Below, one piece after another: positions 10,729-30,933 of a DNA stretch of 64,000 nucleotides; the stretch's first letter is position 1; every line of letters begins with the position of its first letter. The stretch lies in IMG/VR virus record IMGVR_UViG_3300025000_000053, positions 62,001 through 126,000 of that record. One strand, written 5' to 3'. The notes below the pieces were generated by a model that worked only from the letters and a program-made list of their open reading frames with translations, searched no databases and was not told the origin of the DNA. The position numbers and the translations under genes were made by a program.

Positions 10729-13700
10729 TTAAATATCTTCTTCTATACCATTCATTTTAATCTTAATATAAAAAAGATTTGTATTTTCATTCTCCTTCCT
10801 TTTAACTTGAAATTTATTATTAATATCTCTTATAGATTTAATTCTATCTAAATATTCTTCTTTATTTTCATAATCAAGTGAAACAAAACATTTATTTGGT
10901 TCGTCTTCTTTACGATAACTAAATAAATCTTTTTCAAATAAACATTTAAAACTCTCTGGTTCTCTTGAATCATCAAAGAATAATCCATGAGTTTTACAGA
11001 ATGGTGTTACAATACCTGAAGTTCCCATAATGTTCATATAGATAGTTAATCTATACAGTTCTCCTATGAACTTCCCTAAGCTTTCCTTAGGATATCAGAC
11101 TATATCACCATCTCTATATAATAATATTTAATATAGAGAGTTACCTATTTCGATTTAAGGGATTTTCACCCACTCACTTGAGCCCTACTCCTAATGCTTA
11201 TTTCAAAGCTAAAGGATAGTCGTTGAACTTTATTCTTATATATAATAAGAATCTTAGCTGCGGATCACTCAATCTTTTACCTTGTTACCATACCCTAGAT
11301 AGTTAGTCTAAGCCATTATATTATTACTAATATAACTTGGTAGTAAAAGCTCTAAGAACTTCCCCGACAATTAAAGTAATTTTCATTATAGATTATTCCA
11401 TAATGTCCCAGATTTTACATTTCTAGGATCTGAATTGCCGCATACGTTAATATCGAGCTTCCCAATGTAAGATGGGTGAATATCACGATATTTTTTTGAT
11501 ATCCTATTATCATTCTTGTTCCCAACACTATTCGGTTTTTAATTCACATAGATCGTTAATCTATGCAGTTCTCTTATGAACTTCCTTATCTCTCGATAAG
11601 ATAATAGACTATATCTTCATCCATTATATAATCAGTATAATGGAGTTTCCTATTTCGATTTAAGGGATTCTCACCCACCTACTTAGGCCCTACTCCTATT
11701 GTGTATTCCAACACTAAAGGATAGTCGTTGAACTTTATTGTTATATTAAAAAGTATAGTTTTTTGATATATGCACCCATGAAATCCTTTTTTTTATTTTC
11801 CATATTAATCCATTGTATGCCATATTTATTTGTATATTTTTAGATAACATATTTAATTCCTCTTTTATTTCATAAGTGGAATATTTCTTTTCTAATAAAT
11901 TACATATATCATGAATTAATTTTGCTGAATATTTGTTATACACATGGGATTCACCCTTAGACGGATGTTGTAATCCTTTAATCCATGAATGTTCAATATT
12001 CTCTTTAGGAGTAACCCATTCTAAATTCTTATAATAATTATTACCTTTAAAAGTATCCTTATGATTAATTTGAATAATTTTTTCATTGAAAAATATTTTT
12101 AGTGGTAAAAAATAATATCCAACTAATCTGTGCACATAAAATTTTCTCCTTCTAGTATAAATAGCTACCAATGAACATCTTAAATATCCATCTTTATCAA
12201 CAAATGGTTTTATAAGTTTATCAGTTAGTTTATTTCTAACTCTACCATAATTACTAATTTCATATATGTCTTTTACATTATATTCTATAATGTCTTTCCA
12301 TTCTTCTTCATGGGTTTGAATGTGTATTATCATTTAAAACACCTCTTAATATAACAATCTTAGCTGCGGATTACTCAATCCTAAAACCTTTTTACCATAC
12401 CTTAGTTGATTAGACTAAGCCACTATATTGTTCCCAATATAGTTTGGTAGTTTTAGGCTATAAGAGATTTCCCGACAATTAAAGAAAACACAGGCCCTTA
12501 ATTGACCTTTAATAGTATATCTCAGTTTACTAAAAAAGTCCATATCATTTATTTTATCATCAAATCTCAATAGTCCTGAATCATGTAAATTCTGAATTAA
12601 TATATCGCCTGGGAATTTAAATATTTCTTCAATATTTTCTAAAGTCATTTTATTACCTAAACTTATAACTCTATTCATTCTTTTACTAAATGCTTTAGTT
12701 AATAAAGAAGCAATATATTCATTACATCTTAATCTTTTATTGTCTATAGATAAATTATCTTTCTTTCTTAATTCATCAAAATTTTGAATCATCCATCTGA
12801 TAACTGAATAAACATTCTTTCGATGTTCATAGTCTATCTTCAATATATTCTTAGTAGTTTCATCTATTAATCTATCAAAGAAAACTAAAGTATTTAATCC
12901 TTTTTCATAATAATTATAAGCCATAGTAGCACTTAAGCTACCGATACGTCCAACCCAATACTCTAAATCATTTAAAAATTCAAAACTTAATCTATTATTA
13001 GAAACATTTATAATCATGAAAACTATACTCTGTACATATAGATATTTGTTAAAGAAGAATCTATTTACTTTTATTAATATTTTCTTATTAATACGAAAAT
13101 ATATATATTTGTCTAAATCTACTTCTGTTTCAGTAAATTCTATAATAGAATCTAGTGAGAAATATTTAAGTGTTTTTTCAACACCCATTTTAGCAAAATA
13201 AAATAAAAGTACATCGACTTCTTTTCTAAACACAAATACCCCATAAGTATTAGCAGTATAAGTTTCTCCTTGAGTATCTGGATATTCCTTTTTATTTCTT
13301 TTTAAAGATAATGGCATTAATGATTTAAGAATTAAATTCTGTTTGGTTGTATAAGTTGAACTATCAACAAGTTGATATATTAAGAAATATTTTTTACCTT
13401 TAATAGTGTAATAACCATTTTCATCTGGAATTGGTATTAATAATTTCTTAGTAAATAATTTACTCTTATTCTTACAATTTAAATTAAATCTTAGTTTTAA
13501 TTCCCCATATCGACTATCTTGTAAATACATATATTTTTCTGAAACTTTTTTATTTCCTTCTTTAGTTTGTTTAACTTTCTGTCTTGTTGATATATAATCA
13601 TTGATATCAATCTTAGATTCATCATCAATGAATTCATATCCAAGAAATTTGATATTCTTAAGAATCTCTAATGATTTACAACTATTAGCAATATAATGAA

Positions 13701-13788
13701 TCAATTCATCATCATAATTATGATTAATTATATCATAGTTGATTCTTTCCTCATTTGGGTTATTATAATGAGTTATAAACTTCTTCAT
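10729..13788 (-). CDS. rpoB: Multisubunit RNA polymerase beta-like subunit, N-terminal half (non-virion type); 3 exons, about 563 aa
   Basis: Exons 13788-12505, 11535-11425 and 11025-10729. Splicing gives LRYTIKG|PNSVG...RDIHPSYIG...SDP|GTSGIVTPF, the beta GPGGL/RDVH region. Confidence 0.85.
11026..11424 (-). ncRNA. Group I (IA-like) intron I2, no ORF
   Basis: 5' splice site CCT|, terminal G; core elements AATTGTCGGGGAA, GATCCGCAGC, GTTCAACGACTA, GATATAGTC; P1 TCCT/GGGA. Confidence 0.9.
11536..12504 (-). mobile_element. Group I intron I1 carrying an HNH endonuclease; apparent terminal omega-A
   Basis: 5' splice site GGT| with P1 AGGT/GCCT; canonical P, Q, R, S elements; ORF in the P6a loop; 3' end GTGAATTAAAAA|CCG. 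Confidence 0.85.
11746..12333 (-). CDS. Intron-encoded NUMOD4-HNH homing endonuclease
   Basis: WKDI...YEISNYGRVR, VHRLV, INHKD...NNYYKNLEWVTPKEN. Confidence 0.9.
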   Translation of the reverse strand: MIIHIQTHEEEWKDIIEYNVKDIYEISNYGRVRNKLTDKLIKPFVDKDGYLRCSLVAIYTRRRKFYVHRLVGYYFLPLKIFFNEKIIQINHKDTFKGNNYYKNLEWVTPKENIEHSWIKGLQHPSKGESHVYNKYSAKLIHDICNLLEKKYSTYEIKEELNMLSKNIQINMAYNGLIWKIKKRISWVHISKNYTF

Positions 13789-13838
13789 ATAATTTTTTAT
13801 ACCACCTTTCTAGAAAAATATAATACTATAAACAATTT

Positions 13839-13878
13839 TTATCCAATAGGAAACCAATTAAGGCTTCCTATTGGATAA
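13839..13878 (-). terminator. Hairpin/terminator upstream of the RNAP beta-N gene
   Basis: TTATCCAATAGGAA...TTCCTATTGGATAA, 14-bp stem. Confidence 0.55.
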
Positions 13879-13888
13879 TGTATATTTT

Positions 13889-14254
13889 TTATTCCTCTTC
13901 ATCCTCAGTGGTATTATCATCTTTAACCATGAGTTTAAATTCTTGACCAGGGATTAAGAACGGTGTGAAGTTACCTACTTTTTCACCTTCATCATTTTCC
14001 CTATAAGAAATACCCATGTCAAACAGCTGCATTAAATTGATAGAAATATCTTCCCCAGCAGTTTTCTTTTCATTTAGATAAGCAATTGATTGCTGTAAGA
14101 AACGATATGCAATCGTTGCAATTGCTGGTGCATGTGTAACATTAATGTTGTGTTCACTGATAAGAGCTTTATTTGCTCTTTCACAAATTTTAGTAATTTC
14201 CTTCTGATTCTCTCTGATTTCCAAAAATACTGCATCATCCTTATTACTTGCCAT
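13889..14254 (-). CDS. Small conserved-looking protein, possibly HU/IHF-like
   Basis: C-terminal NFTPFLIPGQEFKLMVK echoes the HU P-x-F-x-P-G-x2-L-K motif (weak). Confidence 0.6.
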   Translation of the reverse strand: MASNKDDAVFLEIRENQKEITKICERANKALISEHNINVTHAPAIATIAYRFLQQSIAYLNEKKTAGEDISINLMQLFDMGISYRENDEGEKVGNFTPFLIPGQEFKLMVKDDNTTEDEEE

Positions 14255-14305
14255 AATAAATAACCTCCCCTTATTTTTTAATACTAATATTTTGTTATTA
14301 GCATA

Positions 14306-14851
14306 TTAGTTTTTAATTTTATTAAATTTAAAAATGATATCATGTAATTTCATAGTCATAAATTCATCTTCTTTTGAGTACAGTTTTTCACTAAATTTGT
14401 ATTCAAGAGCTTGACTTAAAAAAGCATGAACTATAGTGAAAATCGCATCAGATGAAGTGATATTGATATCAAATTTCATTAAAAGAATATCATTAGCCAT
14501 ATCACAAAGTTCATTATTCTTTTCATCAGTGTTTAATAAAATAGCAACTTCTGAATTAGTTTCCCGTTCAATATAATCATCATGAACAGGTTTTATTAAA
14601 TAAATAATGTCTTGAACTTTACTATTCATATAGCAAAAAAGATTAATATCATCTAACTGTATTCTACTTTCTTTATTCTTTTCTCTATCAATTAAACCAT
14701 GTAAAAAAGCATACACAATTGTAGCAACCGATGGATATAATAAAATATCTATATTATTTAATTCATATAATCTTTTAGATGTTCTCTTACAAATTTCTCT
14801 TTCAGAATCATTTATTTTTATTAACAAACAGTCCAGATCAATACTACTCAA
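14306..14851 (-). CDS. Hypothetical protein with two repeats homologous to the N-terminus of 13889..14254
   Basis: EICKRTSK..ATIVYAFL and ELCDMAND..FTIVHAFL versus KICERANK..ATIAYRFL. Confidence 0.65.
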   Translation of the reverse strand: MSSIDLDCLLIKINDSEREICKRTSKRLYELNNIDILLYPSVATIVYAFLHGLIDREKNKESRIQLDDINLFCYMNSKVQDIIYLIKPVHDDYIERETNSEVAILLNTDEKNNELCDMANDILLMKFDINITSSDAIFTIVHAFLSQALEYKFSEKLYSKEDEFMTMKLHDIIFKFNKIKN

Positions 14852-14873
14852 CTGTCACAAAACCCCCTGTGTA

Positions 14874-17036
14874 TCAATTTTTTCTTTCATATTTAAATAT
14901 TTTGTAAGCATCCTCTAATGTTACAATAGGTATATAATCTTTTTTAGCTTTATCAACTTTAGATGATTGAACACCTAAATCTTTTACAACTACCATATCA
15001 ATCCCTTTATTATAATTATCAACAACTAGTATGTTTTTATCGTCAAGGAATTTTTCAAATTCCCTATCACGGATTTTAGTAAAACATACTTTACCAATAT
15101 ATTCACGCAAATCTTCTTTTATAACTAATTCGGAACATAAGAAATTTATAAGTTCAATATTACTATTTACTCCTTTAATTATCTTTTCAGCTGTTTTATT
15201 TTTTATTCCTCCTATCATAGTTAATTTTTTTACATCATTATTTAAACATATATCTTTTAATTCATTCAAATAATATATATTTAAAATACGTTTAAATATT
15301 TTTCTCCCTATATCGGGTATCCCCAAAGAACCTAATAATTCATAGTTATAAACAGTTTTACGACTTTTAATACTATCAACTATTTTATTAAATATTTTTT
15401 CACCAAATCCTTTAAATAATAGGATTGTTTGTTTATGATCTTTAATAAAGTATAAATCTTTAATACTTTTTACAACACCTAATTCATATAATAATGTGAT
15501 AATACCACTAGAAATATTAGGTATAGATATCTTTTCAGCATAATTTATAATTTTACCTATTTTTCTAGAATCACAATTTTCATTAACACATTTTAATATA
15601 GGATCTTTAACTAATGGTTGTTTACAATAACGACATTCTGTTGGAGTTTTAAATAGTTTACCTTTTTCATTTCTTTTACAAGTTTCATCTATAATTAAAT
15701 ATGGAATTACATCATACTTAATTATAACTTCATCACCTTTTCTTAATTTACGTTCTTCAAATGTATCTATAGAACCTAAAGAAATATTAGTTATTGTATT
15801 ACCATTTATTTTAACTGGTTCAATTATAGCAACAGGTGCTATTGAACCTAAAATACCAGTTGACATTATAACATCTTTAATTATAGTTCTTTTTTGTTCA
15901 GGTGGTAACTTATATGCAACTTCAAATTTATTAATATTATTTTCTCTCCCAAGTTGTTTAATGGTATTTTCATTTGCAAGAGTTATAACAACACCATCAA
16001 TCGGGATACCATCTTTTCTAACTGAACGAACCATAGTTTCTATAACTCGTTCAATATAATCAAAGTCAGTAATATCTTCAATTAAACTAAATCCTATTCT
16101 ACTATTTAAAATTGATGTAGCAAATTCATCACTTATTCTCTGATATTGAAGAGGTATTATTGTTAGATATTTTAAAAGATTTTTATTTATATCTTTACTT
16201 GTATTAAGAATTGATGAAACTGCACTTCTTGAACTTTTTAATATTCTTTCATTCTTACAAAATTCTTCAAAATCAAAATCCTTCATAATAATTTCTGTTT
16301 TTACACCATAGTCCTCATTAAATATCATAAACTCATATTTATTATCGTCACACATCATAACCTCTTTATAATATTTAATATCTACAAGACCAAAATTAAA
16401 TTTGATTCCATTAAATAAATCAGTTATATCTATTGCTTCATTATTATCAACATCACCTCTAGTTAAAACTTTGTCAGCTGTTTTTAAATTAGATTTAAAT
16501 TCAAAAATACCAGATATACCATCATATTTTGGTGTCATTCTAGCAACTTTCTCAACATTATTTAACTTTCTCCCTAATTTATTTTCAATACCTTTTATCC
16601 AATCTTCTAAAGATTTTCTATTATCCTTTCCCTTATCTTTCTTTCTAATAAAATGAATTTTATCTAAAGTACCTCTTAAAGCTGGATAACTGTGATAACC
16701 TATTTTTCTATCTTTAACTTTATTAATAGGAGCACCAACAATTTCTTTCATTTGTAAGTCTTTGTTCAGTTCATATAATCTATCATAATCTTCATCACTA
16801 ACAGGAGAATCAACTTCACTATTATTATAAATATCTTGCAGTATCTTTATTATTAATTCAATAATAATTAAATCATCTGAATTATAATTTTCAGTCCCAC
16901 TTAATAAAATATTTATAATTCTATTAATTCCAATGGTATTTAATTTTTCTACAATCACTTCATAATCATCAAAAATATCTAATCTTTCAACAAAAATAAC
17001 TGATAATGAATCAATAATATTTTTTTTGTCTAACAT
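14874..17036 (-). CDS. ligA: NAD-dependent DNA ligase
   Basis: TPKYDG adenylation motif, TRGD, DGVVI, AYK, C4 zinc finger, HhH and BRCT-like C-terminus. Confidence 0.95.
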   Translation of the reverse strand: MLDKKNIIDSLSVIFVERLDIFDDYEVIVEKLNTIGINRIINILLSGTENYNSDDLIIIELIIKILQDIYNNSEVDSPVSDEDYDRLYELNKDLQMKEIVGAPINKVKDRKIGYHSYPALRGTLDKIHFIRKKDKGKDNRKSLEDWIKGIENKLGRKLNNVEKVARMTPKYDGISGIFEFKSNLKTADKVLTRGDVDNNEAIDITDLFNGIKFNFGLVDIKYYKEVMMCDDNKYEFMIFNEDYGVKTEIIMKDFDFEEFCKNERILKSSRSAVSSILNTSKDINKNLLKYLTIIPLQYQRISDEFATSILNSRIGFSLIEDITDFDYIERVIETMVRSVRKDGIPIDGVVITLANENTIKQLGRENNINKFEVAYKLPPEQKRTIIKDVIMSTGILGSIAPVAIIEPVKINGNTITNISLGSIDTFEERKLRKGDEVIIKYDVIPYLIIDETCKRNEKGKLFKTPTECRYCKQPLVKDPILKCVNENCDSRKIGKIINYAEKISIPNISSGIITLLYELGVVKSIKDLYFIKDHKQTILLFKGFGEKIFNKIVDSIKSRKTVYNYELLGSLGIPDIGRKIFKRILNIYYLNELKDICLNNDVKKLTMIGGIKNKTAEKIIKGVNSNIELINFLCSELVIKEDLREYIGKVCFTKIRDREFEKFLDDKNILVVDNYNKGIDMVVVKDLGVQSSKVDKAKKDYIPIVTLEDAYKIFKYERKN

Positions 17037-17129
17037 ATTAAAGCCTCCTAAAGTTTTTATATTATGTTAAATATATAATATATAAATAAAAAATAAAGGT
17101 TATTATTTTAACCTTCATTTTATTTGTTT

Positions 17130-19561: not shown

Positions 19562-22446
19562 TTATATTTTAATATCAATAACAAATTTTCCTTCATTAAA
19601 TTTCCTTTTTTCAATCTCATCATCTATAAGTTTTTCAAAATCTCTTTTAGTTCCAACAAATACTTTATTTTCTTTATATTCATTAGTAATGTCAATTCTT
19701 CTTTTAATATCTTCAAATTTTTTATTATCAGTTAAGAAGAACTTTCCATTATAAAATTTACCTTCAAGATGTCCAGTATTAATCTTTATATCAAATAGGT
19801 CATTATTAAATTCTATACCTAATCCCATTGATTTTAAAAATACCGATAATATTTCAATATTTCTATTTTTAAAATTTGCTTTATACTTAAAATCTTTTAT
19901 AGGATTTAATCTTGTCATTAAATTTTTACCTAAATCACGTCTACCTATAACTGATGACCTATAGAATAGATGTAGTTGAGCTATTAGTTCAGTTGGAACC
20001 CCTATATTAGTATTAAGATTTTCATCAATACCTATTCTTATAGGAGTTTTAGAATAAAGTTCCTGGTGAGTTTTAGCTTTATTAGATTTTTCAGGTAATC
20101 CTTTTCTTGATAAAGTTCCAGTTGATCTAGCTGAAAAACCTTTCTTAGCTGTTTGCATTAATTTCATTACATACATATCTCCAACTATTAATTTCTTCAT
20201 CATTTTAATCTTTCTACCAAATCTATTTACATAAACATCATATTGTTCAATCCAATCATGTTCTTCATATAATTTAATAAGTTTATCAAATAAGAATTCC
20301 TCTTCCCATAAAGGAGGTATATGAATAAATATACCTTCTTCAACTAAATTATTGAAAAATTCTTCCTTACCAATGATACTCAATTTTCTTAAATATTCTC
20401 TTAACTTTTCTTCCTGGTCTTTATTAAAATAACTTATTATATTAAGAAACAAATCTTCTTTTTCTTTCATATTAGTCAGTGTTTGAATACGGTCCACTGT
20501 TCTATTGCATATAAACGTAATTGATTGTTCAAAAAGCTGGTATGAGTTTACAATTGTTTTAGACCATATCTTCAGTCCTATAAAGAACTGCCTCCCGTTT
20601 CGGGTTTCCCCTACTCTACTCGCTTCTTCAGTTATAGATAAATTATAACTTATGCTTTCGATGGCCGTTGAGCACATTTCAAATATTACTATTTGAAACT
20701 TCGCTGCGGATTACTCAATTTTAAACCTTTTTACCATATCTGAGTAGTTACTTCAGCCCTTATCTATGTCACCATGATAAGTTGGTAGTTTAAAATTATC
20801 GAACTTTCCCGCAATTAGAGAGGTTTTAGATCGCCTAAACCTTACCAGTCCAGCGATTGATTACAGATATTGAATTAAATAGAATATCAACACGCTCTCC
20901 AGTTTCTAAGAATGGCATTTCATTATCAGGTAATATTTTTGATATAACACCTTTATTACCATATCTCGTTAAATTCACATAGATCGTTAATCTATGCAGT
21001 TCTCTTATGAACTTCCCTAAGTTTCCTTAGGATACTAGACTATCTCTTCATCTCTATAAAATAATATAGAGAGTTACCCACTTCGATTTAAGGGGATTTC
21101 ACCCACTCACTTGAGCCCTACTCCTAATGCTTATTTCAAAGCTAAAGGATAGTCGTTGAACTTTATTCCTCATTATAAGGAATCTTAGCTGCGGATTACT
21201 CAATCTTTTTATTATATAATAAAAAGCTCTAAGAGCTTCCCCGACAATTAAAGTAATTTTCTATATATGTTACCATATATAGGGGCTAAGCTACATAACC
21301 CGTTATTTTTTGCCCTACTTCTAAATAAGCATTTTTTTCAACTAAAAATTCTATTACTATATTAGAAAATACCGAGTTATTTTCTTCTCTCCACTTATAC
21401 TTTTCATCTAATATATTCTTAGCTTTTCTCATATAAAAACTAACTTCTCTAGAATATTTAGAACCAGAATCAATTATCTGTTTACATCTTTTAAATATCT
21501 TCTCATAATAAACTAATTGCATTTTATAATATTTCATTATTTGTCTATTAAAATCATTTTCTTCTAATTCATCTAAAGTTTTATTACAATAGATATCTAT
21601 ATCAATAATTTTACCTTTACCCTCAATAAAGAATAATACATCTGAAGTAAAATCAATCTTTCTAAGATTAGATTTCTTTAAATCATATAACAATTGATTG
21701 TTATGAATTCTTCTCTTAGCACAAATTACCTTATCTTTAACATATTCATTTATATCAGGAAAAGTTTTATAATTATTACTATTGCCATAAATATTACAAA
21801 ATATATCATTATCATTTAAAGAAACTTTAACTCTTTCAACTTCTGTTGAAACCATTCTTTTTGATAATGACTCAGAACAAACAATAGCATCTTCAATAGT
21901 ATTATTTTCTAAAAGGTACATAAATTTAACATTAGTACCATAACAATAATTCATATCATCATCATAAGATGTACTCTTATAAAGAACTTCGCCTTTATTT
22001 ATTGAATTACCAACTTCTTTATTATCAATATTATTGGTATTATACTTAAAACCATATCTTTCTGTTAAGTCTTCTACAGATTTCTTTTCTATAATATCAT
22101 ATTTATCATTTTCTTTATCATATACAAATAATAAATAAAATTGTTCTTCATTTTTATCATCTGTAAATTTACTTATTTTATCAATAATAACACAATTATT
22201 TTTAACCTTTTTGAAACCAGTAGAATTCTTACCTACTATATTCTCATAATTAGTAAAAATTCTTGGAAACTCAGGTTCATTTAAAGTAACACATTGTTTC
22301 AAATGAGCAGTAAACATAACATTCCTTGATGAACTAATATATCCTGGATTAGTTAATAACGTCATCCCAAATATATCATCTTTACCTTTAAATTCTTTTT
22401 CTTTCTCTTGTAGTATCTCTTTTAGTGACATTGTGGTTTTATACAA
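19562..22446 (-). CDS. rpoB: Multisubunit RNA polymerase beta-like subunit, C-terminal half (non-virion type); 3 exons, about 750 aa
   Basis: Exons 22446-21298, 20966-20852 and 20550-19562. Splicing restores GQKITG|RYGNKGVIS and INR-L-NSYQLFE; also IEDAI, YVMKL, ARSTG. Confidence 0.9.
20551..20851 (-). ncRNA. Divergent group I intron I4 lacking P2 and P9 (phase 1)
   Basis: P1 ATCGCT|/GGCGAT with U-G pair; P10 TAAACT/GGTTTA; P7 GGCCA/TGGTC; only 11 nt from P7 to terminal G. Confidence 0.85.
20967..21297 (-). ncRNA. Group I intron I3, no ORF
   Basis: GGT| 5' site, terminal G before AGA TAT GGT; canonical core; P9 CCTAAG-GAAA-CTTAGG. Confidence 0.9.
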
Positions 22447-22536: not shown

Positions 22537-24491
22537 TTATGCCGCTTCTTTAAATTGTTTATCTTGTGATTTTTCTAATCTATCGCATAATTCAAAAATA
22601 TTTAACAATTGACCATTTTCTTCTGGTTCAACATGTGATAATTGTTTTTCCAATATAGGTAATGATCTATTAAATAATTCATATCTTAATTTTTCATTAG
22701 TAAGAAATTCTTTTCTAAATTTCCTACTATCAAATTTAATATCTTTTACTCCTTCAATATATTTATAAGGATTACGTCCAGCAATTAACTCATTATCTTC
22801 AGCAAATCTTAATTGAGTTAAAATTGGATCAAATCCAGTAGACTGATCATATATAAGATTTACAAATTGACCAGCTTTATTTGTTCTAGATTTTAAAAAT
22901 TCAGCTCTTACACCAAAACCATCAAAACCATGTTCATCTTTTTTAAATTTTTCTGAACCTATAGCTATGAAGTTTATTAATAAATTAGCATAATAAATCG
23001 TATATTCACATTAGTCGTCAGCCAATGCAGTTCTCTTCTCTTATGAACTTCCTTATCTTTCGATAAGATACTAGACTATATCTTCATCCTTAATAAATTA
23101 TTTATTAAGGAGTTACCCATTTCGTAAAGAACTTTTTAAGTTCACCCTACCATTATTGACTTGTAGGTCTACTCCTCAGTCTAAATTAGACTTCATCAGA
23201 TAGTCGTTGAACCTTTCTCATAGTAATAATATGAGACTTGGCTGCGGATTACTCAATCTTTTTATTATATAATAAAAAGCTCTAAGAGCTTCCCCGACAA
23301 TTAAAGTAATACTAACATAATATTACTATTATGCCACCCTAAATTTAGGTGCATTCCCACCCGTAAAGTTCACATAGGTCGTTAGTCTATGCAGTTCTCT
23401 TATGAACTTCCTTATCTTTCAATAAGATACCAGACTATATCATTAACCTAATAATTTCTTATTGGGCTACTTCCTATTTCGATTTAAGGGATTTTCACCC
23501 ACTCACTTGAGCCCTACTCCTAATGATCATTTCAGATCCACTGGGATAGTCGTTGAACTTTATTCTAATAATTTACTAGAATCTTAGCTGCGGATTACTC
23601 AATCCTAAAACCTTGTTATTAATATAATTTAGTAGTTTTAGGCTCTAAGAGCTTCCCCGACAATTAAAGAAGTTTTCAACATACATTTCTGTATGAGGCC
23701 CCACAAATCTCTAGTTTAGGGATACTCTGGTCCATCTTCATATATAATAATTGTGGTTGTGTTTTATGCATCGGATTTATTTCCATCTTTTGATTAATGT
23801 GGTTTATAGCAATAACATTTATATTATATGCTTTTATAATTGGCATTAATCTTTTATAGAATTGAGCTAATGCTTTAGCAACTCTATTGGCATATGTCCC
23901 ACCTTCCATTTCATTAGAAGTATCTTTTGAAGCAACTGTTGGTATTGAATCAATAATCATTACAGTTGGAACAAATGCCTTTATTGGTCTATTAAATTCA
24001 TCAACTAATCCAGTATTATACATATAATCTTTTCTATTAGCTTCTTTTTCTTGAGCTATTTCTACTATACTATTAAAAATATCTTCAATATAATTTTTTT
24101 CTTGCTTTAAAATATATTTATCATCAAGTTCTTGTTGAGTCATAGATGTTACATTTTTTATTCTAGTATATGATAAAACTTGTTCTAAATCAAAATGTTG
24201 AACAAATGCATTGTCACTGAATCGTCTAACAATATTAGCTGCAATCTGAATAGCAAAAGTAGTTTTGGCAGTACCAGACTTACCTATAATTGTCATAAAT
24301 GTGCCACCCACTATACCAATAGATGAATAAGTTGTTATGAGTTCCTCATCCAAATTCCTAACTTCAATCATATATCCATTTCTATAGTCAAATGGTACAA
24401 ATCCTGTTGGATAACAAATAGAAGTTTGTGTTGCATTAAATAATCCTTTTTTATCCTTTTCTCTTAATCTTGAAAGCATTTTATTAGCCAT
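22537..24491 (-). CDS. recA: RecA/UvsX-like recombinase; 3 exons, about 416 aa
   Basis: Walker A GKSGTAKT, IIDS, INHI. Exons 24491-23718, 23361-23347 (15 nt) and 22998-22537 give DQSIP|GGNAP|IYYAN, equivalent to RecA GGxALKFYAS. Confidence 0.9.
22999..23346 (-). ncRNA. Group I intron I6, no ORF
   Basis: CCT| 5' site with P1 CACCT/GGGTG; terminal G before ATT TAT TAT; canonical R and S elements. Confidence 0.9.
23362..23717 (-). ncRNA. Group I intron I5, no ORF
   Basis: CCT| 5' site (P1 weak), terminal G before GGT GGG AAT; canonical core. Confidence 0.85.
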
Positions 24492-24613
24492 TTTTTTTAT
24501 TTCAATCCCCCTTATTAACTTTATTTATATGATAGTTGTTCTAAAGATAAAATTTTAAAAAATATAAAAAAAATAAAGAATGGAATTTAACCATTCTTTA
24601 TTTTTTATTAGGT

Positions 24614-25540: not shown

Positions 25541-25578
25541 ATTATCATCTCTCCCCTATTTTATTTTAATACAAGTTT

Positions 25579-26499
25579 TTAAAACTTATATTGTATTAAA
25601 GAACAGTTGTTCAATAAAATATACACCACTTTGAATTTTGTTGTGAGTTCTCTTAGAACTACTTTATATTTTTCTTTAATAATATCAATTGATTCGTTAG
25701 AATCAATAAATAAAGTAATAACACTGTAATTGAGCTGTTTTACTTCATCAATAAGTTTTATTAAATCTTCCGTTTCATTACCATTCTCATTGAAATAAGT
25801 ATATAAAGTATAATATATAATATTATCCTTAACAACCTTTTTCATGGTACTTTCCATTTTTTGATAACTATCACCGGAACATATAACTATCTGTGTAGGT
25901 CTTTTGGGTCTAGTATTTTCTATCTTTAAAGCAGGTGGGGTAAATGCTCTCACCACTTTTTCTATCTGTTTCTTATAAACTAAATTACCATTTTGATCAT
26001 ACTCAACATTATAACGAATAATATCTTTTTCTTTCTTATCAAATGCATAAATTGTAAATTTAGACTTAAGATTAGAATCCATTGAAATGATTAAATTCAA
26101 CTCATCGGCATTATTGATATGCTCAATGATGAAATTTTTACCCATTTCTAAATTATAAATAACTTTATCCCTAATATCTAAATTCATAAGAAGTACGTTT
26201 CTATTATTCCCATTTCTTGATTGTATAATGAAAGGATTTAAATCTTTATATCCAAACAAAACACTTGTATCATCACTACATACTTTAACAATTTCTGTGG
26301 TTTTAGTTACACTTTCAATATCATTTTTAACTTTGTTTAAAAAATCTTGATTTGCAGATGTTAAAAATAATCTACAATTAAGATAATGAATCTCTCTGTC
26401 TTTCCCTATGACTTCACAGTTCTTACTTATCTTTAAGAAATTCTTTCTTCTATCTGGGGTTTCCCATTTTTTCTCTGTCTCATTTAATAAAAATATCAT
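25579..26499 (-). CDS. Hypothetical protein, paralogue of 24614..25540
   Basis: Same shared motifs; GGAGG SD. Confidence 0.75.
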   Translation of the reverse strand: MIFLLNETEKKWETPDRRKNFLKISKNCEVIGKDREIHYLNCRLFLTSANQDFLNKVKNDIESVTKTTEIVKVCSDDTSVLFGYKDLNPFIIQSRNGNNRNVLLMNLDIRDKVIYNLEMGKNFIIEHINNADELNLIISMDSNLKSKFTIYAFDKKEKDIIRYNVEYDQNGNLVYKKQIEKVVRAFTPPALKIENTRPKRPTQIVICSGDSYQKMESTMKKVVKDNIIYYTLYTYFNENGNETEDLIKLIDEVKQLNYSVITLFIDSNESIDIIKEKYKVVLRELTTKFKVVYILLNNCSLIQYKF

Positions 26500-26657
26500 C
26501 CCTCATAACCTCCTAATCATTTTTTACCAATCTTTTCTATTTAATAAATTTGTTTCTTTATAAATTATTTTTAATCAAGTGAAAATTTTTAACATGAAGA
26601 CAATAAGAATTCAATATGAGGTTGAAATTTTAATCAACCTCATATTAACATATATTT

Positions 26658-27506
26658 CTATAAAAATTTCTTATTCTTCATATCGGAAATAACTTCTGAT
26701 ACTTTTGGATATGTTTCAGAACTTATCTGAGTGAATTGAATTCTTCTAGCACTATCTTTACCTCTTTTATCGTCCTTTTCACGACGATCAATATAATAAC
26801 TGAGTCTTTGCTTTATTTCTTTCTTCTTCATTTCTTCAAGATAAGAAAGAACAAAGTTAGTTAAGATATTCCAAACTACCATTTGTTTATCATCTAAATG
26901 GCGAATTACATCCTTTCTTTCAAGAGAAATCTCCATAACAACAGTATTTATAAAATCTTCATTAAATAATGACATAAAAAGTTTCTTTAAAGTTTTATTG
27001 TCAAGTTTTAATTCAGATTCTTTACTCAAGGCATAAAGTTTACGAATGATTCTTTGGACATAAATCCCAACAATTCTTTCATTCTCAACCATGGCTTTGT
27101 CCGGCATAATGGCTAATAATTCCTTAATCGTACTTTCATCTAAATCAGTTATTTTCTTTCTTAACTTTTTAACCTTTTTCTTAAGTAAATCGTCAATGAT
27201 TCCACAATAAATATCATTAACATCAGAGTCAATCTTCCCATGATTTCTTTCCAAGAAATTATACAATAAAACAACTACGGTTAGGTCATTGTTATCACCA
27301 TTATCTTTAATGACCTTTTTCAAGGTTTTAGCAAATTTCAAGTCCATCATTTTCTCAAATATAACAGTTACAATATCTTGCTCCTTAAAACCCCTACGAA
27401 TATAAAAGGTTGTAAGGTCTGAAAGGTTATCCGAAATAACTCGAATCCTTTCATCTTTATCCATTTTCTTAGGTTTCCATTCTTTTAACAAATCTTTTAC
27501 TGACAT
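26658..27506 (-). CDS. Hypothetical helical jumbo-phage protein
   Basis: 282-aa ORF; GAGGAGG SD; promoter motif at 27605. Confidence 0.75.
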   Translation of the reverse strand: MSVKDLLKEWKPKKMDKDERIRVISDNLSDLTTFYIRRGFKEQDIVTVIFEKMMDLKFAKTLKKVIKDNGDNNDLTVVVLLYNFLERNHGKIDSDVNDIYCGIIDDLLKKKVKKLRKKITDLDESTIKELLAIMPDKAMVENERIVGIYVQRIIRKLYALSKESELKLDNKTLKKLFMSLFNEDFINTVVMEISLERKDVIRHLDDKQMVVWNILTNFVLSYLEEMKKKEIKQRLSYYIDRREKDDKRGKDSARRIQFTQISSETYPKVSEVISDMKNKKFL

Positions 27507-27698
27507 TACATATTACCTCCTCTAAATTTATATAATAGTTTTTCAATATTAATTTGTTGTTTATTTACAAATTAATTTTTAAACTATTGACTTATACTTT
27601 AAAAATAATATATATTTATAAATTAAATATAATTTTTTATAAACTAATAAAAAAATAAAACATTGATAGAATCATAATCAATGTTTTATTTCTTAATA

Positions 27699-28439
27699 CT
27701 AATTAGAACAATCTAGAGTATAAATTCCATCAATATCCGGTTGATTGAATAATAATGGTGTTTCATCCGATATATTTAAAGCTGGACGAACACCATCACC
27801 TGAAAAATACACACTATTATCATCTAATTTACCATATGCATTTACTATTCTAACACCACATGGGTACCTAATATTAAATGAAGTTCTTAACCACCAATCC
27901 CAATAATTAACATTAATATTCCCATATTTTATAAATTGTTTAGATACATTTACCATAAGATTATTAGTATCGTTAAATAATTCTATTAAATTTCCTTCCT
28001 TTTTATTACTATCATGTATTAATCCAACCTCTGTAACTGATAATAAAAATATTTTATCTATTAAATTTTCTATTTTGTTTTCATTTTGATTATTTACAAA
28101 TATTTCAATACTAGTATCTAAAATCTTAGAAAATTCATTAGTATTAAAATGACTTAAAAATCCTGAGACTGTATTTAACCAATGTCGTATATTAGATAAG
28201 CCGTAGTTGTTACATTCTTTATCATCTAGGTCAACCTTTGCTTCATTAATTGATTTTAAATTAAAAGGACGTAAATCAATAATTTTATCTGTTAATAAAG
28301 TTATTGAATTTTCAGGATAACCTGGATGGTTTTTAGCTGCAATACTCCAAATAATAGGTGATATTTCACTATCACCAACTTTATAACTACCAAATCTAAC
28401 CTTATCACTAATATTTAAGTCTTTAACTAATTTAGACAT
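27699..28439 (-). CDS. DUF6273-like (C-type-lectin-fold) protein
   Basis: NNYGLSNIRHWLN, DKIFLLSVTEVG, WWLRTS, GVRPALNI. Confidence 0.75.
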   Translation of the reverse strand: MSKLVKDLNISDKVRFGSYKVGDSEISPIIWSIAAKNHPGYPENSITLLTDKIIDLRPFNLKSINEAKVDLDDKECNNYGLSNIRHWLNTVSGFLSHFNTNEFSKILDTSIEIFVNNQNENKIENLIDKIFLLSVTEVGLIHDSNKKEGNLIELFNDTNNLMVNVSKQFIKYGNINVNYWDWWLRTSFNIRYPCGVRIVNAYGKLDDNSVYFSGDGVRPALNISDETPLLFNQPDIDGIYTLDCSN

Positions 28440-28457
28440 TAATAAATTCCTCCATTG

Positions 28458-28889
28458 CTATAGTATTAATCCAGTTATTTGGACTAGTTCAGCCCGCTCA
28501 GAATAATAACCATTAGAAGTTCCATACCATCTGATTGTTACATATCCTTTTATTGTTGCAAGTTTATAAAATGTCCATGTGTAGTGTGTTTCTCCTTCAT
28601 CTTTATCTCCTGAATTACTTGTTTCTTCAGCCATTAAAATGGGGGAATCAATTAAATCATCAATATTTCCAATTATTTCTTCTATATATACACATTCACA
28701 ACACAGCTGGTCATGAAACATAGAATAAATAGTTCCATCTGAACAATAAAAATTTATTTTCCCATATTCCTTATCAATATTAATCTTAATTAAAGTTTTA
28801 TTAACAAGATTACTAAATTCAACAAATTTGTAATCTTCTATACCTTTAATAACTATTCCTTTATTTTTCTTTTTTTTATTCTTTTTCAT
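28458..28889 (-). CDS. Conserved phage protein (CCE...TWTFYKLAT...WYGxSNGYYSE type)
   Basis: Recognisable widespread phage motif set. Confidence 0.75.
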   Translation of the reverse strand: MKKNKKKKNKGIVIKGIEDYKFVEFSNLVNKTLIKINIDKEYGKINFYCSDGTIYSMFHDQLCCECVYIEEIIGNIDDLIDSPILMAEETSNSGDKDEGETHYTWTFYKLATIKGYVTIRWYGTSNGYYSERAELVQITGLIL

Positions 28890-28925
28890 TTTTTAATCCC
28901 CCCTTAAACATTTTTATTCATTTAA

Positions 28926-29582
28926 TTAACCCAATCTAGTTGATATATTCCATACTTCCTTTCTTACATCTGTTTCAGTTATTTCTAGTTTGGTAGATCT
29001 ATCAACTGATATACAAGCTAATGCTAATATTTGAGCATGGTTGATTTCTGATATTTTAATTCCTTTAGACATAATATCAAAACCATTATCATTTTCAATA
29101 AAAGTTATTGTTTCTTTTTGACTTTCAATATCAGATTTTGTTTCATTTTTAGATTCATCATTATCCTTATTAGATTTTATTGAAATAACAAAACTATTAT
29201 TTTCTTTATTAGGTTTAACTGTTGTATAATTATTTTTTAGATTTCCTTTAAATGATATTAACTCACTATATTCATTATTAAGACATTTATTTAAATCTAT
29301 TGAGTTATCGGTACAATATTTATTCGGCATTAAAACAGTAATTCTTTTATCACTAACATCTAAATCCAATTCAATAAGTGGATGTTTTTGACTTTCAATA
29401 TCACATTTTGGTTTTTTATTTACTTGTGTATCAATATTTACTCCATTATCATAATAATTTTCAACAAGATCTTTTGTAGTATTAAAATATAAATTTTTTG
29501 GTATAAACAATATTCCACCATTTTTGTTAAATTTAGCAAACAATTCGCTTAGTTTATCACCTTTTTTAACGGATAATCTCAT
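28926..29582 (-). CDS. Hypothetical protein with a short internal repeat
   Basis: K(C/S)DIESQK occurs twice, also as a DNA repeat near 29121 and 29391. Confidence 0.65.
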   Translation of the reverse strand: MRLSVKKGDKLSELFAKFNKNGGILFIPKNLYFNTTKDLVENYYDNGVNIDTQVNKKPKCDIESQKHPLIELDLDVSDKRITVLMPNKYCTDNSIDLNKCLNNEYSELISFKGNLKNNYTTVKPNKENNSFVISIKSNKDNDESKNETKSDIESQKETITFIENDNGFDIMSKGIKISEINHAQILALACISVDRSTKLEITETDVRKEVWNISTRLG

Positions 29583-29710
29583 AATAGTATCCCCCTTATT
29601 TTTTTATTTCTTATTAAATAATATATAAATATAAATTTGTTATTCTTTTGTTACCAATCATATAAAAATATAATAAGATGTGTATTTTTATTATACACAT
29701 CTTATTATAT

Positions 29711-29872
29711 TTATTTACTTAAATTATCTAGATTGGTTTTTACAGATGACTCAATTAATGCTTCTAATTCATCCTTTTTTTTAACTTTTTTCTTTGTTGG
29801 GTCCTCGATATCCAATTGACCAAAGATACCCACTTCAGTTATTATACATAATTCTTCATTCTTTTCTAACAT
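29711..29872 (-). CDS. Small 53-aa protein missed by the ORF track
   Basis: AGGAGGTG SD, ATG at 29872, MLEKNEELCIITEVGIFGQLDIEDPTKKK..., TAA at 29711. Confidence 0.6.
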   Translation of the reverse strand: MLEKNEELCIITEVGIFGQLDIEDPTKKKVKKKDELEALIESSVKTNLDNLSK

Positions 29873-29887
29873 ATTTATCACCTCCTG

Positions 29888-30933
29888 TTATTTTAAAGAT
29901 TTTTTAACCAATAAACCTTTTGTAACTAGATCACTAGAAATTCCCATTGATATTAAATGCACATCAATTAAATTTAATGTTACCTTATTTTCAACATTAT
30001 TAGTTAAACTATCTAAAGAAACAAATCCTTTTTGGGCTATAAAGGCATACATTTCATTTTTCATAACCATATCATCTGCTCTAGGCGTAAAAGTTCATAT
30101 TGTTTGTTAAACAATACAGTTCTCTTATGAACTTCCCTAACTTTCATTAGGATACCAGACTATATCATTAACCTAATAATTTCTTATTGGGCTACTTCCT
30201 ATTTCGATTTAAGGGATTTTCACCCACTCACTTGAGCCCTACTCCTGTTGCTTATTTCAAAGCTAAAGGATAGTCGTTGAACCTTTCTCTAATATATTAG
30301 AGACTTAGCTGCGGATCACTCAATCTTTTTATTATATAATAAAAAGCTCTAAGAGCTTCCCCGACAATTAAAGAAGTTTTCTATATATGTTACCACATAT
30401 AGGGGCTAAGCTATGTAACCCATGAGTTCTCGTAATGCATCATTAGCTCCAACAGATAATAAAGAAAAGTTTTCTTGATCTGATTCCCTAGCATTTTTAT
30501 CTTCACCAACAACCTGACCAGTCATTGCAGAACGACTTGAACTCTTTGTTGATAAAGTATTTTTTTTACTTAAGAATTGTTGCATTCTTTTAATATGGAC
30601 ATAACCAACAGGTACTTCATATTTAGTAATAATTGGATTATCAATACTGTTATTGACAAAAGGTACTACAACTCTTTCAAATAAAGGTATATCTAATACT
30701 TTTGCAGCTTTTGTTATATTTTCAATATTTAATTCTCTTTCATAATCAATCATATCTAAAATAAGATATTGCTCAATATCTTTAAAAAATTCTTTAAAAA
30801 ATATATCAAATTGATTATCAGACATTGATTGAAACATGTCTTTATATTTTTTAGTATTCGCATCTGTTGGGTCTAATGCACTAAATGTATCATAAATCAA
30901 TTTTTCCATTTTTTTTCTTTTGTCTTTAGTCAT
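29888..30933 (-). CDS. rpoB: Second RNA polymerase beta-like C-terminal subunit (probably virion RNAP); 2 exons, about 237 aa
   Basis: Exons 30933-30418 and 30085-29888. VGYVHIKRMQQ, TGQV, ARESDQE, ELMG|PRADD match the beta YMxKL...QRxGEME...ExLTxKSDD region. Confidence 0.8.
30086..30417 (-). ncRNA. Group I intron I7, no ORF
   Basis: GGT| 5' site (P1 GGGT/GCCC), terminal G before CCT AGA GCA; canonical core. Confidence 0.9.

What the first reader, a model, noticed from the sequence alone, without database searches (positions are those of the whole stretch)
11026..30417. Seven related introns are mosaics of each other, with a graded loss of P5
Seen: I5 (23426-23521) and I7 (30151-30246) share 96 identical nt covering P7', P8 and P3'. 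I3 (21184-21293) and I7 (30304-30413) share about 110 nt of 5' domain with 4 mismatches, and both insert after GGGT. I2 and I3 share about 85 nt around P7.1/P7.2. I6 shares the P4-P6 core with I3 but has its own P7.1/7.2. P5 runs from long (I1, I2, I4) through partly deleted (I5) to a minimal AT hairpin (I3, I6, I7). Inference: ongoing gene conversion or module swapping between paralogous introns, and within-genome spread by reverse splicing at short IGS matches. Same-orientation repeats also risk deleting essential genes.
Basis: partly seen in the sequence, partly recalled or inferred. Interest (0 to 1): 0.6.

Follow-up and report, generated by a model that had tools for sequence, protein, structure and literature searches.

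The report
Mosaic group I introns in jumbo phage
Seven self-splicing group I introns that interrupt RNA-polymerase and recombinase genes of an uncultured groundwater jumbo phage are patchworks of one another and of about a dozen more copies in the same genome, so dispersed intron copies keep exchanging pieces by recombination, a natural counterpart of the intron-domain shuffling seen in phage T4 in the laboratory.

Summary
All seven elements are IA2-type group I introns on the minus strand. They sit in two RNA polymerase beta genes, a UvsX-like recombinase gene and a putative RNAP beta fragment. The quoted blocks are exact: 96/96 nt for I5 and I7, and 110 nt with 4 mismatches for I3 and I7.

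The family has about 20 copies in the 250-kb source contig. Recombination tests are significant. PHI gave 0 of 2000 permutations for six window introns and for all 20 copies. Triplet tests gave p below 5e-6 for I3, I5, I6 and I7.

Related contigs decide the matter. A relative about 10% diverged in exons lacks I3 precisely. Its I5, I6 and I7 orthologs carry different internal modules. Its I4 ortholog matches I4 throughout, apart from the P6 loop where it carries an endonuclease gene, so I4 is not mosaic. A more distant complete relative has no introns.

P5 is not a graded series. I5 has an internal deletion, I6 received a pre-existing short-hairpin allele, and I7's short hairpin is old.

Best explanation: DNA-level ectopic and allelic gene conversion within a population of co-occurring strains. 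Reverse splicing fits the I3/I7 pair, which share a guide sequence and both follow GGGT, but it is not shown and the phage encodes no reverse transcriptase. An assembly artefact is unlikely but not excluded for I7.

The parts
11533..12504 (-). Intron I1 (972 nt) in an RNAP beta-subunit gene (AR9-like). An HNH homing-endonuclease gene sits in the P6 loop. P5a/b/c extension is long and there is no P2.
   Evidence: Open frame across the splice junction. The exon matches the AR9 RNAP beta subunit. Core modules are homologous to the family. Rfam does not detect it.
11746..12333 (-). Intron-encoded homing endonuclease, 195 aa, with NUMOD4 and HNH_3 domains.
   Evidence: Pfam NUMOD4 E=2.2e-12, HNH_3 E=1e-4; phrog_59 E=2e-32. 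It is 34-40% identical to the endonucleases of G17, G51, o7 and e2.
11026..11424 (-). Intron I2 (399 nt) in the same RNAP beta gene, within the HPSYIG...CGNSDPG motif region. Long P5 extension, no ORF.
   Evidence: Open frame across the junction. P7.1 is 100% identical to I3, G17 and G135. It shares a 94-nt exact block with G17.
20967..21297 (-). Intron I3 (331 nt) in the second RNAP beta gene, splitting the GQKITG|RYGNKG motif after GGGT. Short A/U P5 hairpin. This is a recent gain.
   Evidence: Rfam RF00028 scores 74 bits. It is precisely absent in relative G002, with the junction at 21298|20966. It is also absent in L003 and L004.
20551..20851 (-). Intron I4 (301 nt), same gene, after ATCGCT. 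Long P5 and no P9 extension. It belongs to a different subtype and is not mosaic.
   Evidence: Boundaries come from the intron-less homolog L003. Rfam scores 58 bits. Ortholog o4 is 94-98% identical in the four scorable modules other than P6 (M1, M2, M4, M5). M3 (P6) is 59% because o4 carries an endonuclease gene there, and I4 has no M6/M7. Triplet test not significant.
23362..23717 (-). Intron I5 (356 nt) in the UvsX-like recombinase gene, after CCCT. Truncated P5 extension.
   Evidence: Rfam scores 68 bits. The spliced protein is colinear with L003. The 3' half is G51-like, whereas ortholog o5 is 77-84% identical there and has a full P5.
23369..23536 (-). 168-nt block of I5 that is exactly identical to intron G51 (genome 51657-51824, outside the window). 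It contains the 96-nt I5/I7 block at 23426-23521.
23347..23361 (-). 15-nt mini-exon (codons GGNAP) between I5 and I6.
   Evidence: The spliced translation matches the intron-less L003 protein residue for residue here.
22999..23346 (-). Intron I6 (348 nt) in the UvsX-like gene, after CACCT. The short P5 hairpin is identical to that of I3.
   Evidence: Rfam scores 68 bits. M1, M5 and M7 are closest to ortholog o6. M2 is 100% identical to I3 and o7, and M3 is 97% identical to G48. Ortholog o6 has a long P5.
30086..30417 (-). Intron I7 (332 nt) in a putative RNAP beta fragment gene (phrog_3233, like phiR1-37 g203), after GGGT.
   Evidence: Rfam scores 78 bits in the genome search. Open frame across the junction. 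Host gene. Module origins.
30151..30246 (-). 96-nt block of I7 identical to I5 and to G51, covering P7.2, P3', P8 and P7'.
30195..30306 (-). 112-nt block of I7 (P6, P7.1, P7.2) identical to the beta' intron G1 at the start of the contig. Ortholog o7 has a homing-endonuclease gene in P6 here.
30304..30413 (-). 110-nt 5' domain of I7 that matches I3 (21184-21293) with 4 mismatches. Two of the mismatches are the P3 5'-strand positions that fit each intron's own P3' strand.

Best explanation
The seven elements belong to a family of about 17-20 IA2-type group I introns. The family has colonised conserved motifs of essential genes in an AR9/PBS1-like jumbo phage: RNAP beta and beta' paralogs, a UvsX-like recombinase and other genes outside the window.

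The copies share 20-50-nt stretches of near-identical catalytic core. These are J3/4-P4, P4'-P6, J6/7-P7, P7.2-J-P3', J8/7-P7' and the base of P9.1. The variable peripheral hairpins P2, the P5 extension, P6, P7.1, P8 and P9 lie between them.

During recombination-dependent replication and double-strand-break repair, one intron copy is repaired from another. The template can be another site in the same genome or an allele in a co-infecting strain. Exchange points fall in the shared core. Only non-crossover products (gene conversion) survive, because a crossover between direct repeats would delete essential genes.

The result is a set of introns whose peripheral hairpins are reassorted. Selection keeps each product a working ribozyme. 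This shows in the long-range P3 helix, which stays complementary in each mosaic.

Shown here: the mosaic pattern, its statistical support, the presence/absence polymorphism of introns and of their endonuclease genes, and module differences between orthologs.

Inferred: the DNA-level mechanism, the direction of transfers (for example G51 to I5, a G1-like copy to I7, and an I7/I3-like copy to I6), and splicing competence.
For: 1. Exact blocks of 70-168 nt link non-orthologous introns, against a median longest match of 28 nt.
2. The nearest neighbour changes from module to module for I3, I5, I6 and I7.
3. PHI: 0 of 2000 permutations reached the observed value for six window introns (z about -6.8), for the 20 copies of the contig and for all 28 sequences. 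With I4 included, the seven window introns give p=0.018.
4. Triplet maximum-descent tests: 0 of 200,000 permutations for I7 (I3/I5 and c1/G51), I6 (o6/I3), I5 (o5/G51) and I3 (I7/I2). I4 is not significant.
5. Orthologs in G002 (exons 86-93% identical). I6 and o6 agree in M1 (95%) but differ in M2 (44%). I6's M2 is 100% identical to I3. I5's M5-M6 are 100% identical to G51 but only 84% and 77% identical to o5. I7's M3-M4 are 97-100% identical to G1 but only 48% and 79% identical to o7.
6. I3 is precisely absent in G002, and the complete relative G004 has no introns.
7. P3 strands co-vary. Own pairs average -4.9 kcal/mol and cross pairs -2.95, with 0 of 50,000 permutations as good. Two of the four I3/I7 mismatches restore P3.
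8. The homing endonucleases are only 29-40% identical in protein, while the ribozyme modules are 80-100% identical.
9. The genome encodes a UvsX-like recombinase.
10. Laboratory precedent: recombination between T4 introns (Hall, Liu & Shub 1989 Nature 340:574, reference seen; Bryk & Belfort 1990 Nature 346:394, from my own knowledge).
Against: No read-level proof. The public runs are held only as short unitigs that break in the shared modules.

The exact I7 combination occurs only in the source contig among JGI metagenome contigs.

The source contig is itself a wrap-around of two strains joined at an intron.

Triplets were chosen after looking at the data. Sites inside a replaced hairpin are not independent.

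At the coarse level of module clusters (at least 90% identity), only one strict four-combination incompatibility was found.

Splicing was not tested, and no RNA data exist for these samples.
Confidence: 0.8

Rival explanations
1. The mosaics are assembly artefacts. The short-read assembler threaded paths through exact repeats shared by many intron copies and strains, and so built intron interiors that exist in no single molecule.
For: The contig starts in the middle of an intron. Its last 21.7 kb is an 81-88% identical second pass of its first 20.5 kb, so the assembler switched strain at an intron. A second contig (G001) ends inside the I5 repeat block at window 23485. Core modules have 100-1600x unitig depth against 4-30x for exons. 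G001 and G000 differ mainly by a 62-nt patch in I3, and the G001 version weakens P3. The I7 combination has no independent contig.
Against: Apart from that 62-nt patch in I3, G001 is identical to the window through I1, I2, I4 and I6, the rest of I3 and part of I5. Every intron is flanked by the correct exons, in synteny with G002 and G004. Adjacent exact blocks in I7 overlap, or are separated only by I7-specific single-base differences, so each junction must be carried by real reads. P3 complementarity holds in every window mosaic, which random path switching would often break. G002 and L017, assembled from other samples, show the same alleles in yet other combinations.
Confidence: 0.07
2. No partial exchange occurred. 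Sites lose their intron and are re-invaded by different whole introns of the family through endonuclease-driven homing from co-infecting phages. The shared blocks reflect only common descent plus constraint on the catalytic core.
For: Intron and endonuclease presence/absence is polymorphic: I3, G242, G246, I4/o4 and I7/o7. About 60 nt of the 96-nt block is core conserved in most copies and even in unrelated phages, with 93% identity over 58 nt in Vibrio phages.
Against: I6 and o6, and I7 and o7, keep the same site-specific P1-P2 (95-98%) and related P8, yet differ completely in internal modules. So only parts were replaced. Peripheral hairpins that are not constrained (P5 hairpin, P6, P8) are identical between different sites. 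PHI and the triplet tests reject a single tree.
Confidence: 0.08
3. RNA-level spread. ORF-less introns reach new sites by reverse splicing into transcripts that match the 4-6-nt guide sequence. Reverse transcription and recombination follow, and template switching between intron RNAs creates the mosaics.
For: I3 is a recent gain. It shares P1-P2 and the GCCCC guide with I7, and both follow GGGT. G51 has the same P2 with guide GACCC and follows GGTT. G178 and G228 share P1-P2 and both follow TGGT. The exons flanking I3 and I7 share nothing beyond GGGT, so there is no homology for DNA-level homing.
Against: No reverse transcriptase gene is in the contig. GGGT occurs about 550 times in the unit genome, yet introns sit only in conserved motifs of essential genes. 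A working P1 is needed for survival whatever the insertion route, so a match between guide and exon is expected anyway. The literature reports no direct evidence for this pathway (PMC3984707).
Confidence: 0.15

Closest known systems
Recombination between the td, nrdB and sunY (nrdD) group I introns of phage T4 (Hall, Liu & Shub 1989 Nature 340:574; Bryk & Belfort 1990 Nature 346:394, the latter cited from memory)
   Same: Dispersed IA-type introns in one phage genome recombine through short conserved core elements and give hybrid introns that still splice. Crossovers between same-orientation copies delete the DNA between them.
   Different: In T4 the events were selected in the laboratory among three introns. 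Here the products are fixed in natural genomes, among about 20 copies, as conversion patches without deletions. They can be dated against orthologs in related phages.
Staphylococcus phage Twort introns (three in orf142, two in nrdE; Landthaler & Shub 1999; Landthaler et al. 2002, references seen)
   Same: IA2 ribozymes with P7.1/P7.2, several introns in one gene, and HNH-type endonucleases in some. Megablast of the window finds Staphylococcus phage intron cores.
   Different: There are far more copies here, introns are separated by exons of 15 and 20 nt, and module exchange is documented against orthologs.
Intron-rich huge phages ('Jug' gut phages, 18.5 group I introns per genome on average; PMC12880540)
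   Same: Roughly twenty group I introns and many HNH endonucleases interrupt essential genes of a jumbo phage.
   Different: Those elements average about 206 nt and were described as small group-I-like ribozymes in a Bacteroides-phage lineage. In the passages I read, that paper did not mention inter-intron mosaicism.
HNH-endonuclease introns of SPO1/SP82 (I-HmuI family) and the PhiPA3 gp210 intron in an RNAP gene (PMC11620839; review PMC12908238)
   Same: An intron with an HNH endonuclease sits in a conserved motif of a polymerase gene of a large virulent phage. Homing is by gene conversion between co-infecting relatives.
   Different: Most copies here have no ORF. The exchange described here is between introns at different sites, not only between alleles with and without the intron.

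Membership tests
Group I intron (Rfam RF00028), IA2-like subgroup | Covariance-model score at or above the family's gathering score (50 bits) | tested here: met
   I3 74, I5 68.3, I6 67.9 and I4 58.4 bits; I7 78.2 bits. I1 (ORF inserted) and I2 are not reported by Rfam. They are assigned by module-by-module homology to the others.
Group I intron (Rfam RF00028), IA2-like subgroup | 5' exon ends in U, which pairs with G of an internal guide sequence (P1); the last intron base is G | tested here: met
   All 7 window introns and all 19 complete introns of the contig. The P1 pairings were read by eye.
Group I intron (Rfam RF00028), IA2-like subgroup | Removing the intron restores a reading frame colinear with intron-less homologs | tested here: met
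   I3 to I6 were checked against the intron-less relatives L002 and L003. I1, I2 and I7 give an open frame through conserved motifs.
Group I intron (Rfam RF00028), IA2-like subgroup | P7.1/P7.2 insertion between P7 and P3' (the IA hallmark) | tested here: met
   A 65-nt insertion lies at that place in the Rfam alignment of I3. The homologous module is present in all copies.
Group I intron (Rfam RF00028), IA2-like subgroup | Self-splicing activity | not testable with these tools
   No RNA runs hold the stretch. Indirect support comes from P3 covariation and intact host reading frames.
HNH homing endonuclease (NUMOD4 + HNH_3, I-HmuI-like) | NUMOD4 and HNH domains in an ORF located in a peripheral loop of the intron | tested here: met
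   The I1 ORF at 11746-12333: NUMOD4 E=2.2e-12 (above the cut-off). HNH_3 scores 22.3 bits, just below its 24.8-bit cut-off. phrog_59 E=2e-32. It sits in the P6 loop.
Inter-intron recombination of the T4 type | Hybrid introns whose exchange points lie in conserved core elements shared by the parents | tested here: met
   Changes of ancestry fall at the conserved anchors used to cut the modules. The exact blocks end in P7.1/P7.2, at the base of P9 and at P4'-P6.
Inter-intron recombination of the T4 type | Deletion or rearrangement of the DNA between recombining introns | tested here: inconclusive
   Unitig 'joints' link I3-like to I5/I6-like sequence. Their flanks are only 21-35 nt, so they are equally explained by other mosaic copies.
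Reverse-splicing transposition | A new site matches the donor's guide sequence, and a reverse transcriptase is available | tested here: inconclusive
   The guide/exon match is met for I3/I7, G51 and G178/G228. No RVT_1 match is in the contig. The host is unknown.

The most novel reading that the evidence does not exclude
The intron family behaves as a concerted multi-copy gene family across a population of co-infecting jumbo phages. ORF-less ribozymes reach new sites through guide-sequence-directed reverse splicing (I7-like to the I3 site after GGGT). Conversion from ORF-less paralogs then erases homing-endonuclease genes and swaps peripheral domains. If so, this population would be a natural system in which RNA-guided transposition of a group I intron into a protein-coding gene could be shown.
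Probability: 0.15. Interest if true: 0.75.

Novelty: new member of a known kind. Interest (0 to 1): 0.55.

Why it matters
How group I introns without an endonuclease gene persist and reach new sites is unsettled. The review read here states that reverse splicing has no direct experimental support (PMC3984707).

This phage population offers several things together:
- A recent site gain (I3) with an identifiable donor-like copy.
- Orthologous introns with and without endonuclease genes.
- Clear-cut replacement of single ribozyme domains.

It shows that peripheral domains of natural ribozymes (the P5 extension, P6 and P8) are interchangeable. It also shows that a long-range helix (P3) is kept matched after exchange.

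It gives a living example of intron-dense, split RNAP genes. That bears on the published idea that the split RNAP genes of jumbo phages arose through intron mobility followed by rearrangement (PMC7598289).

On the practical side, such intron families break and mis-join metagenomic assemblies of huge phages.

Tried and rejected
1. Reads. The only public runs are groundwater metagenomes held as short unitigs. They tile parts of I3-I6 without differences but break in the shared modules, so they neither confirm nor refute long-range connectivity.

2. A scan of JGI metagenome contigs for the I7-specific combination of P2 and P8 found only the source contig. I7 therefore has no independent replicate.

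3. My first triplet statistic took the larger of ascent and descent. It was uninformative for unbalanced walks and I replaced it.

4. Clustering modules at 90% identity and counting four-combination incompatibilities gave only one cycle. It was too coarse because most alleles are singletons. The site-level PHI test is the test I rely on.

5. I looked for the donor of the 62-nt I3 patch that distinguishes G001 from G000. No intron in my set matches it for more than 23 nt.

6. Purifying selection alone as the cause of the identical blocks. I rejected it because unconstrained hairpins are identical between different sites and differ between orthologs.

7. A Pfam scan of the endonuclease ORFs of G002 failed because I gave wrong frames. 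I compared the ORFs by blastp instead.

8. Rfam at a permissive threshold found no further introns in 9000-33000. It misses I1 and I2.

Full report
**What the window is.** The window is bases 62001-126000 of a 249,853-bp IMG/VR and JGI contig (contig name). Public runs holding it are groundwater metagenomes. GC content is 20-29% along the window. The exons are most similar, at 32-39% protein identity, to RNA polymerase subunits of the uracil-DNA jumbo phages AR9, PBS1 and PALS_2.

**The seven elements are group I introns.** Rfam RF00028 passes its gathering score for I3, I4, I5 and I6 in the window scan and for I7 in the genome scan. I1 and I2 are missed by Rfam but are homologous module by module.

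I fixed boundaries in three ways:
- Precise absence of the intron in relatives.
- Colinearity of the spliced protein with intron-less homologs.
- An open frame across the junction.

This gives:
- I1 12504-11533
- I2 11424-11026
- I3 21297-20967
- I4 20851-20551
- I5 23717-23362
- I6 23346-22999
- I7 30417-30086

All lie on the minus strand.

**Host genes.**
- An AR9-like RNAP beta gene holds I1 and I2, in the HPSYIG...CGNSDPG region.
- A second RNAP beta gene holds I3 and I4. I3 splits GQKITG|RYGNKG.
- A UvsX-like recombinase gene holds I5 and I6.
- A small gene resembling phiR1-37 g203 / phrog_3233 holds I7.

I1 carries a 195-aa NUMOD4/HNH endonuclease gene in its P6 loop.

**The observation.**
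- 96/96 identical for I5 and I7.
- 110 nt with 4 mismatches for I3 and I7.
- A 72-nt exact block, and 117 nt with 8 mismatches, for I2 and I3.
- A 70-nt exact block for I3 and I6 over P3'-P4-P5.

The median longest exact match among all pairs is 28 nt.

Folding the P4-P5 segments confirms the three P5 states:
- I2 has a three-way P5a/b/c extension.
- I5 has a P5a stem with only a remnant on top.
- I3 has a 9-bp A/U hairpin.

The Rfam alignment of I3 places a 65-nt insertion (P7.1/P7.2) between P7 and P3'. The 96-nt block therefore covers P7.2, P3', P8 and P7'. Much of it is core shared by most copies, and even by Vibrio and Staphylococcus phage introns. The diagnostic part is the roughly 34-nt P8 hairpin.

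**The family is larger than seven.** BLAST with the window's introns, together with Rfam, finds 20 related copies in the contig. I cut every copy at six conserved anchors into seven modules:
- M1: P1-P2-P3
- M2: P4-P5-P4'
- M3: P6
- M4: P7-P7.1
- M5: P7.2-P3'-P8
- M6: P7'-P9
- M7: P9.1 to the 3' end

Each peripheral hairpin occurs in a few discrete alleles, and these are combined differently in different introns. Examples:
- The P8 allele of I5 and I7 is also in G51, and I5 shares 168 exact nt with G51.
- I7 shares 112 exact nt (P6-P7.1-P7.2) with the beta' intron G1.
- I2 shares 94 exact nt with G17.

**Statistics.** On module-wise MAFFT alignments, the PHI test gave these results:

| Set | Permutations as low as observed |
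|---|---|
| Six window introns, without I4 | 0 of 2000 (z about -6.8) |
| 20 copies of the contig | 0 of 2000 |
| All 28 sequences | 0 of 2000 |
| Seven window introns, with I4 | 36 of 2000 |

Triplet maximum-descent tests gave 0 of 200,000 permutations for I7, I6, I5 and I3. They gave about 1e-4 for I2, 0.015 for I1, and no signal for I4.

Caveats: I chose the triplets after inspecting the data, and sites within a replaced hairpin are not independent.

**Relatives decide the interpretation.** Four related IMG/VR contigs were found.

- *G001* is 99.96% identical to the contig over 85.5 kb.
- *G002* has exons 86-93% identical.
- *G003 and G004* are about 65% identical in protein. G004 is a complete 218-kb genome with terminal repeats and has no RF00028 match at all.

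L003 and L004 lack I3, I4, I5 and I6. G002 lacks I3 precisely, with the junction at 21298|20966. It has orthologs of I4, I5, I6 and I7 at the same sites.

Comparing orthologs:
- *I4.* It is 94-98% identical to o4 in every module except the P6 loop, where o4 carries an endonuclease gene.
- *I6.* It agrees with o6 in M1 (95%), M5 and M7. Its M2 is 100% identical to I3 and its M3 is 97% identical to G48. In contrast, o6 has a long P5 extension.
- *I5.* It agrees with o5 only in M1 (85%). Its M4-M7 are 94-100% identical to G51. o5 has a full-length P5.
- *I7.* It agrees with o7 in M1-M2 (98%) and M5 (92%). Its M3-M4 are 97-100% identical to G1. o7 has an endonuclease gene in P6.

Modules that are identical to a paralog, yet unlike the ortholog, must have been exchanged after the two phages diverged.

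Exchange also crosses genomes. o6 (in G002) and G227 (in this contig, in a beta' gene) share 214 exact nt.

Further relatives in the same samples show more variants:
- A G51-site intron without an endonuclease gene and with the short P5 hairpin.
- A G178-like intron at a site that is empty here.

**P5.** The three states are real but are not steps of one process:
- I5's truncation is a derived internal deletion.
- I6's hairpin is a replacement by an allele that already existed at other sites (I7/o7, I3, G178, G228 and e1).
- I7's hairpin predates the split from G002.

**Function is maintained.** The two strands of P3 lie about 200 nt apart, in M1 and M5. Across 19 introns, own pairs are more stable than cross pairs: -4.9 against -2.95 kcal/mol, with 0 of 50,000 permutations as good. 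Two of the four I3/I7 mismatches (21254 and 21256) change the P3 5' strand from the I7 type to the type that fits I3's own P3' strand.

The endonucleases of I1, G17, G51, o7 and e2 are one family but only 29-40% identical in protein. This is far more diverged than the ribozyme modules.

**Mechanism.** The pattern fits DNA-level homologous recombination, that is gene conversion during replication or break repair. Exchange would occur between intron copies through their shared core segments, both within a genome and between co-infecting strains. Crossover products would be lost because they delete essential genes.

This is the natural counterpart of the T4 experiments of Hall, Liu & Shub (1989; reference seen) and of Bryk & Belfort (1990; from memory).

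Reverse splicing remains possible for the gain of I3, which has the same guide sequence and P2 as I7 and, like I7, follows GGGT. It is also possible for G51 and for the G178/G228 pair. Three points weigh against treating it as shown:
- Any surviving insertion needs a working P1, whatever the route.
- No reverse transcriptase gene is present.
- The review states that the pathway lacks direct evidence.

**Artefact check.** Grounds for concern:
- The contig begins inside an intron.
- Its last 21.7 kb is a diverged second pass of its first 20.5 kb, so two strains were joined at an intron.
- G001 ends inside the I5 repeat.
- Unitig depth in core modules is 10-100 times that of exons.
- The I7 combination has no independent contig.
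- 24 of the 32 differences between G000 and G001 lie in one 62-nt patch of I3.

Points against an artefact:
- G001 reproduces I1, I2, I4 and I6 exactly, and all of I3 outside that 62-nt patch.
- Exon order is syntenic with the relatives.
- Adjacent exact blocks overlap or are bridged by intron-specific single-base differences.
- P3 stays complementary in all window mosaics.
- Other assemblies show the same alleles in other combinations.

I put the artefact explanation at about 7%.

**Novelty.** Intron-rich jumbo phages are published, with 18.5 introns per genome in Jug phages. Inter-intron recombination is a known laboratory phenomenon.

What is new here is a natural, datable record of domain exchange, site gain and endonuclease-gene turnover in one intron family. 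It is a new member of a known kind, of moderate interest.

Noticed in passing
Whole contig G000: bases 1-20492 versus 228153-249853. The window is 62001-126000.: The 249,853-bp contig overlaps itself. Its first 20.5 kb and last 21.7 kb are the same genome region at only 81-88% identity, and the contig starts in the middle of the beta' intron. The unit genome is therefore about 228 kb. The contig joins two co-occurring strains at an intron.
   Followed up: partly
window 23347-23361; also genome 177722-177741 (outside the window): Two pairs of group I introns are separated by exons of only 15 nt (GGNAP in the UvsX-like gene) and 20 nt (in an RNAP beta gene). Each mini-exon must supply the P1 strand of the downstream intron. 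This raises the question of splicing order and exon skipping.
   Followed up: partly
window 21044-21105 (I3: P7.2, P3' and P8): The near-identical contig G001 shows 32 differences over 85.5 kb, and 24 of them lie in this one 62-nt patch of I3. The G001 version has an 8-nt deletion in P7.2, another P8, and a P3' strand that pairs poorly with the unchanged 5' strand (-0.3 against -2.7 kcal/mol). It is either a very recent conversion from an unsampled copy or an assembly path difference.
   Followed up: partly
window 20551-20966 versus L005 (G002) 8086-9500: I4 and its ortholog are 95-98% identical, but the flanking exon DNA is less conserved: 81.7% for exon 2 and 80% for the first 100 nt of exon 3, against about 90% further away. 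The ortholog carries a 341-aa ORF of another family in P6. This looks like a footprint of homing or co-conversion from a diverged donor, or of target-site divergence.
   Followed up: no
genome 178369-179148 (intron G178, outside the window); L017 8016-8808: The P6 loop of this intron holds a 118-aa ORF on the strand opposite to the intron. A homologous intron with the same antisense ORF sits at a different site in a related contig, about 225 nt downstream of the G51 site, where this genome has none.
   Followed up: no
G001 contig 9118-9502 (L009): About 385 nt of extra sequence lies immediately upstream of the beta' intron in G001. It is not aligned to this contig and its 3' end looks intron-like. 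It may be a second intron beside the metal-binding motif codons (GGDYDGDQ, my reading from memory as the counterpart of bacterial NADFDGD).
   Followed up: no
L005 (G002) 1-905: The relative has an intron with an HNH gene in the first RNAP beta gene, 51 nt upstream of the I1 site (after RFD rather than after TIKG). The same gene is therefore occupied at different sites in different strains.
   Followed up: no
window 11026-30417 and genome-wide: Insertion sites coincide with the most conserved catalytic motifs. Matches to bacterial motifs are from memory. The sites are beta GRYGNKG, beta HPSYIG..., beta DDSIRTAM (bacterial DDANRALMG), beta' GGDYDG|DQ, beta' NRNPT (bacterial NRAPTLH), UvsX GGNAP, and a KKRY-type polymerase motif. 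Five of the 19 complete introns follow GGGT and three follow CCCT.
   Followed up: partly
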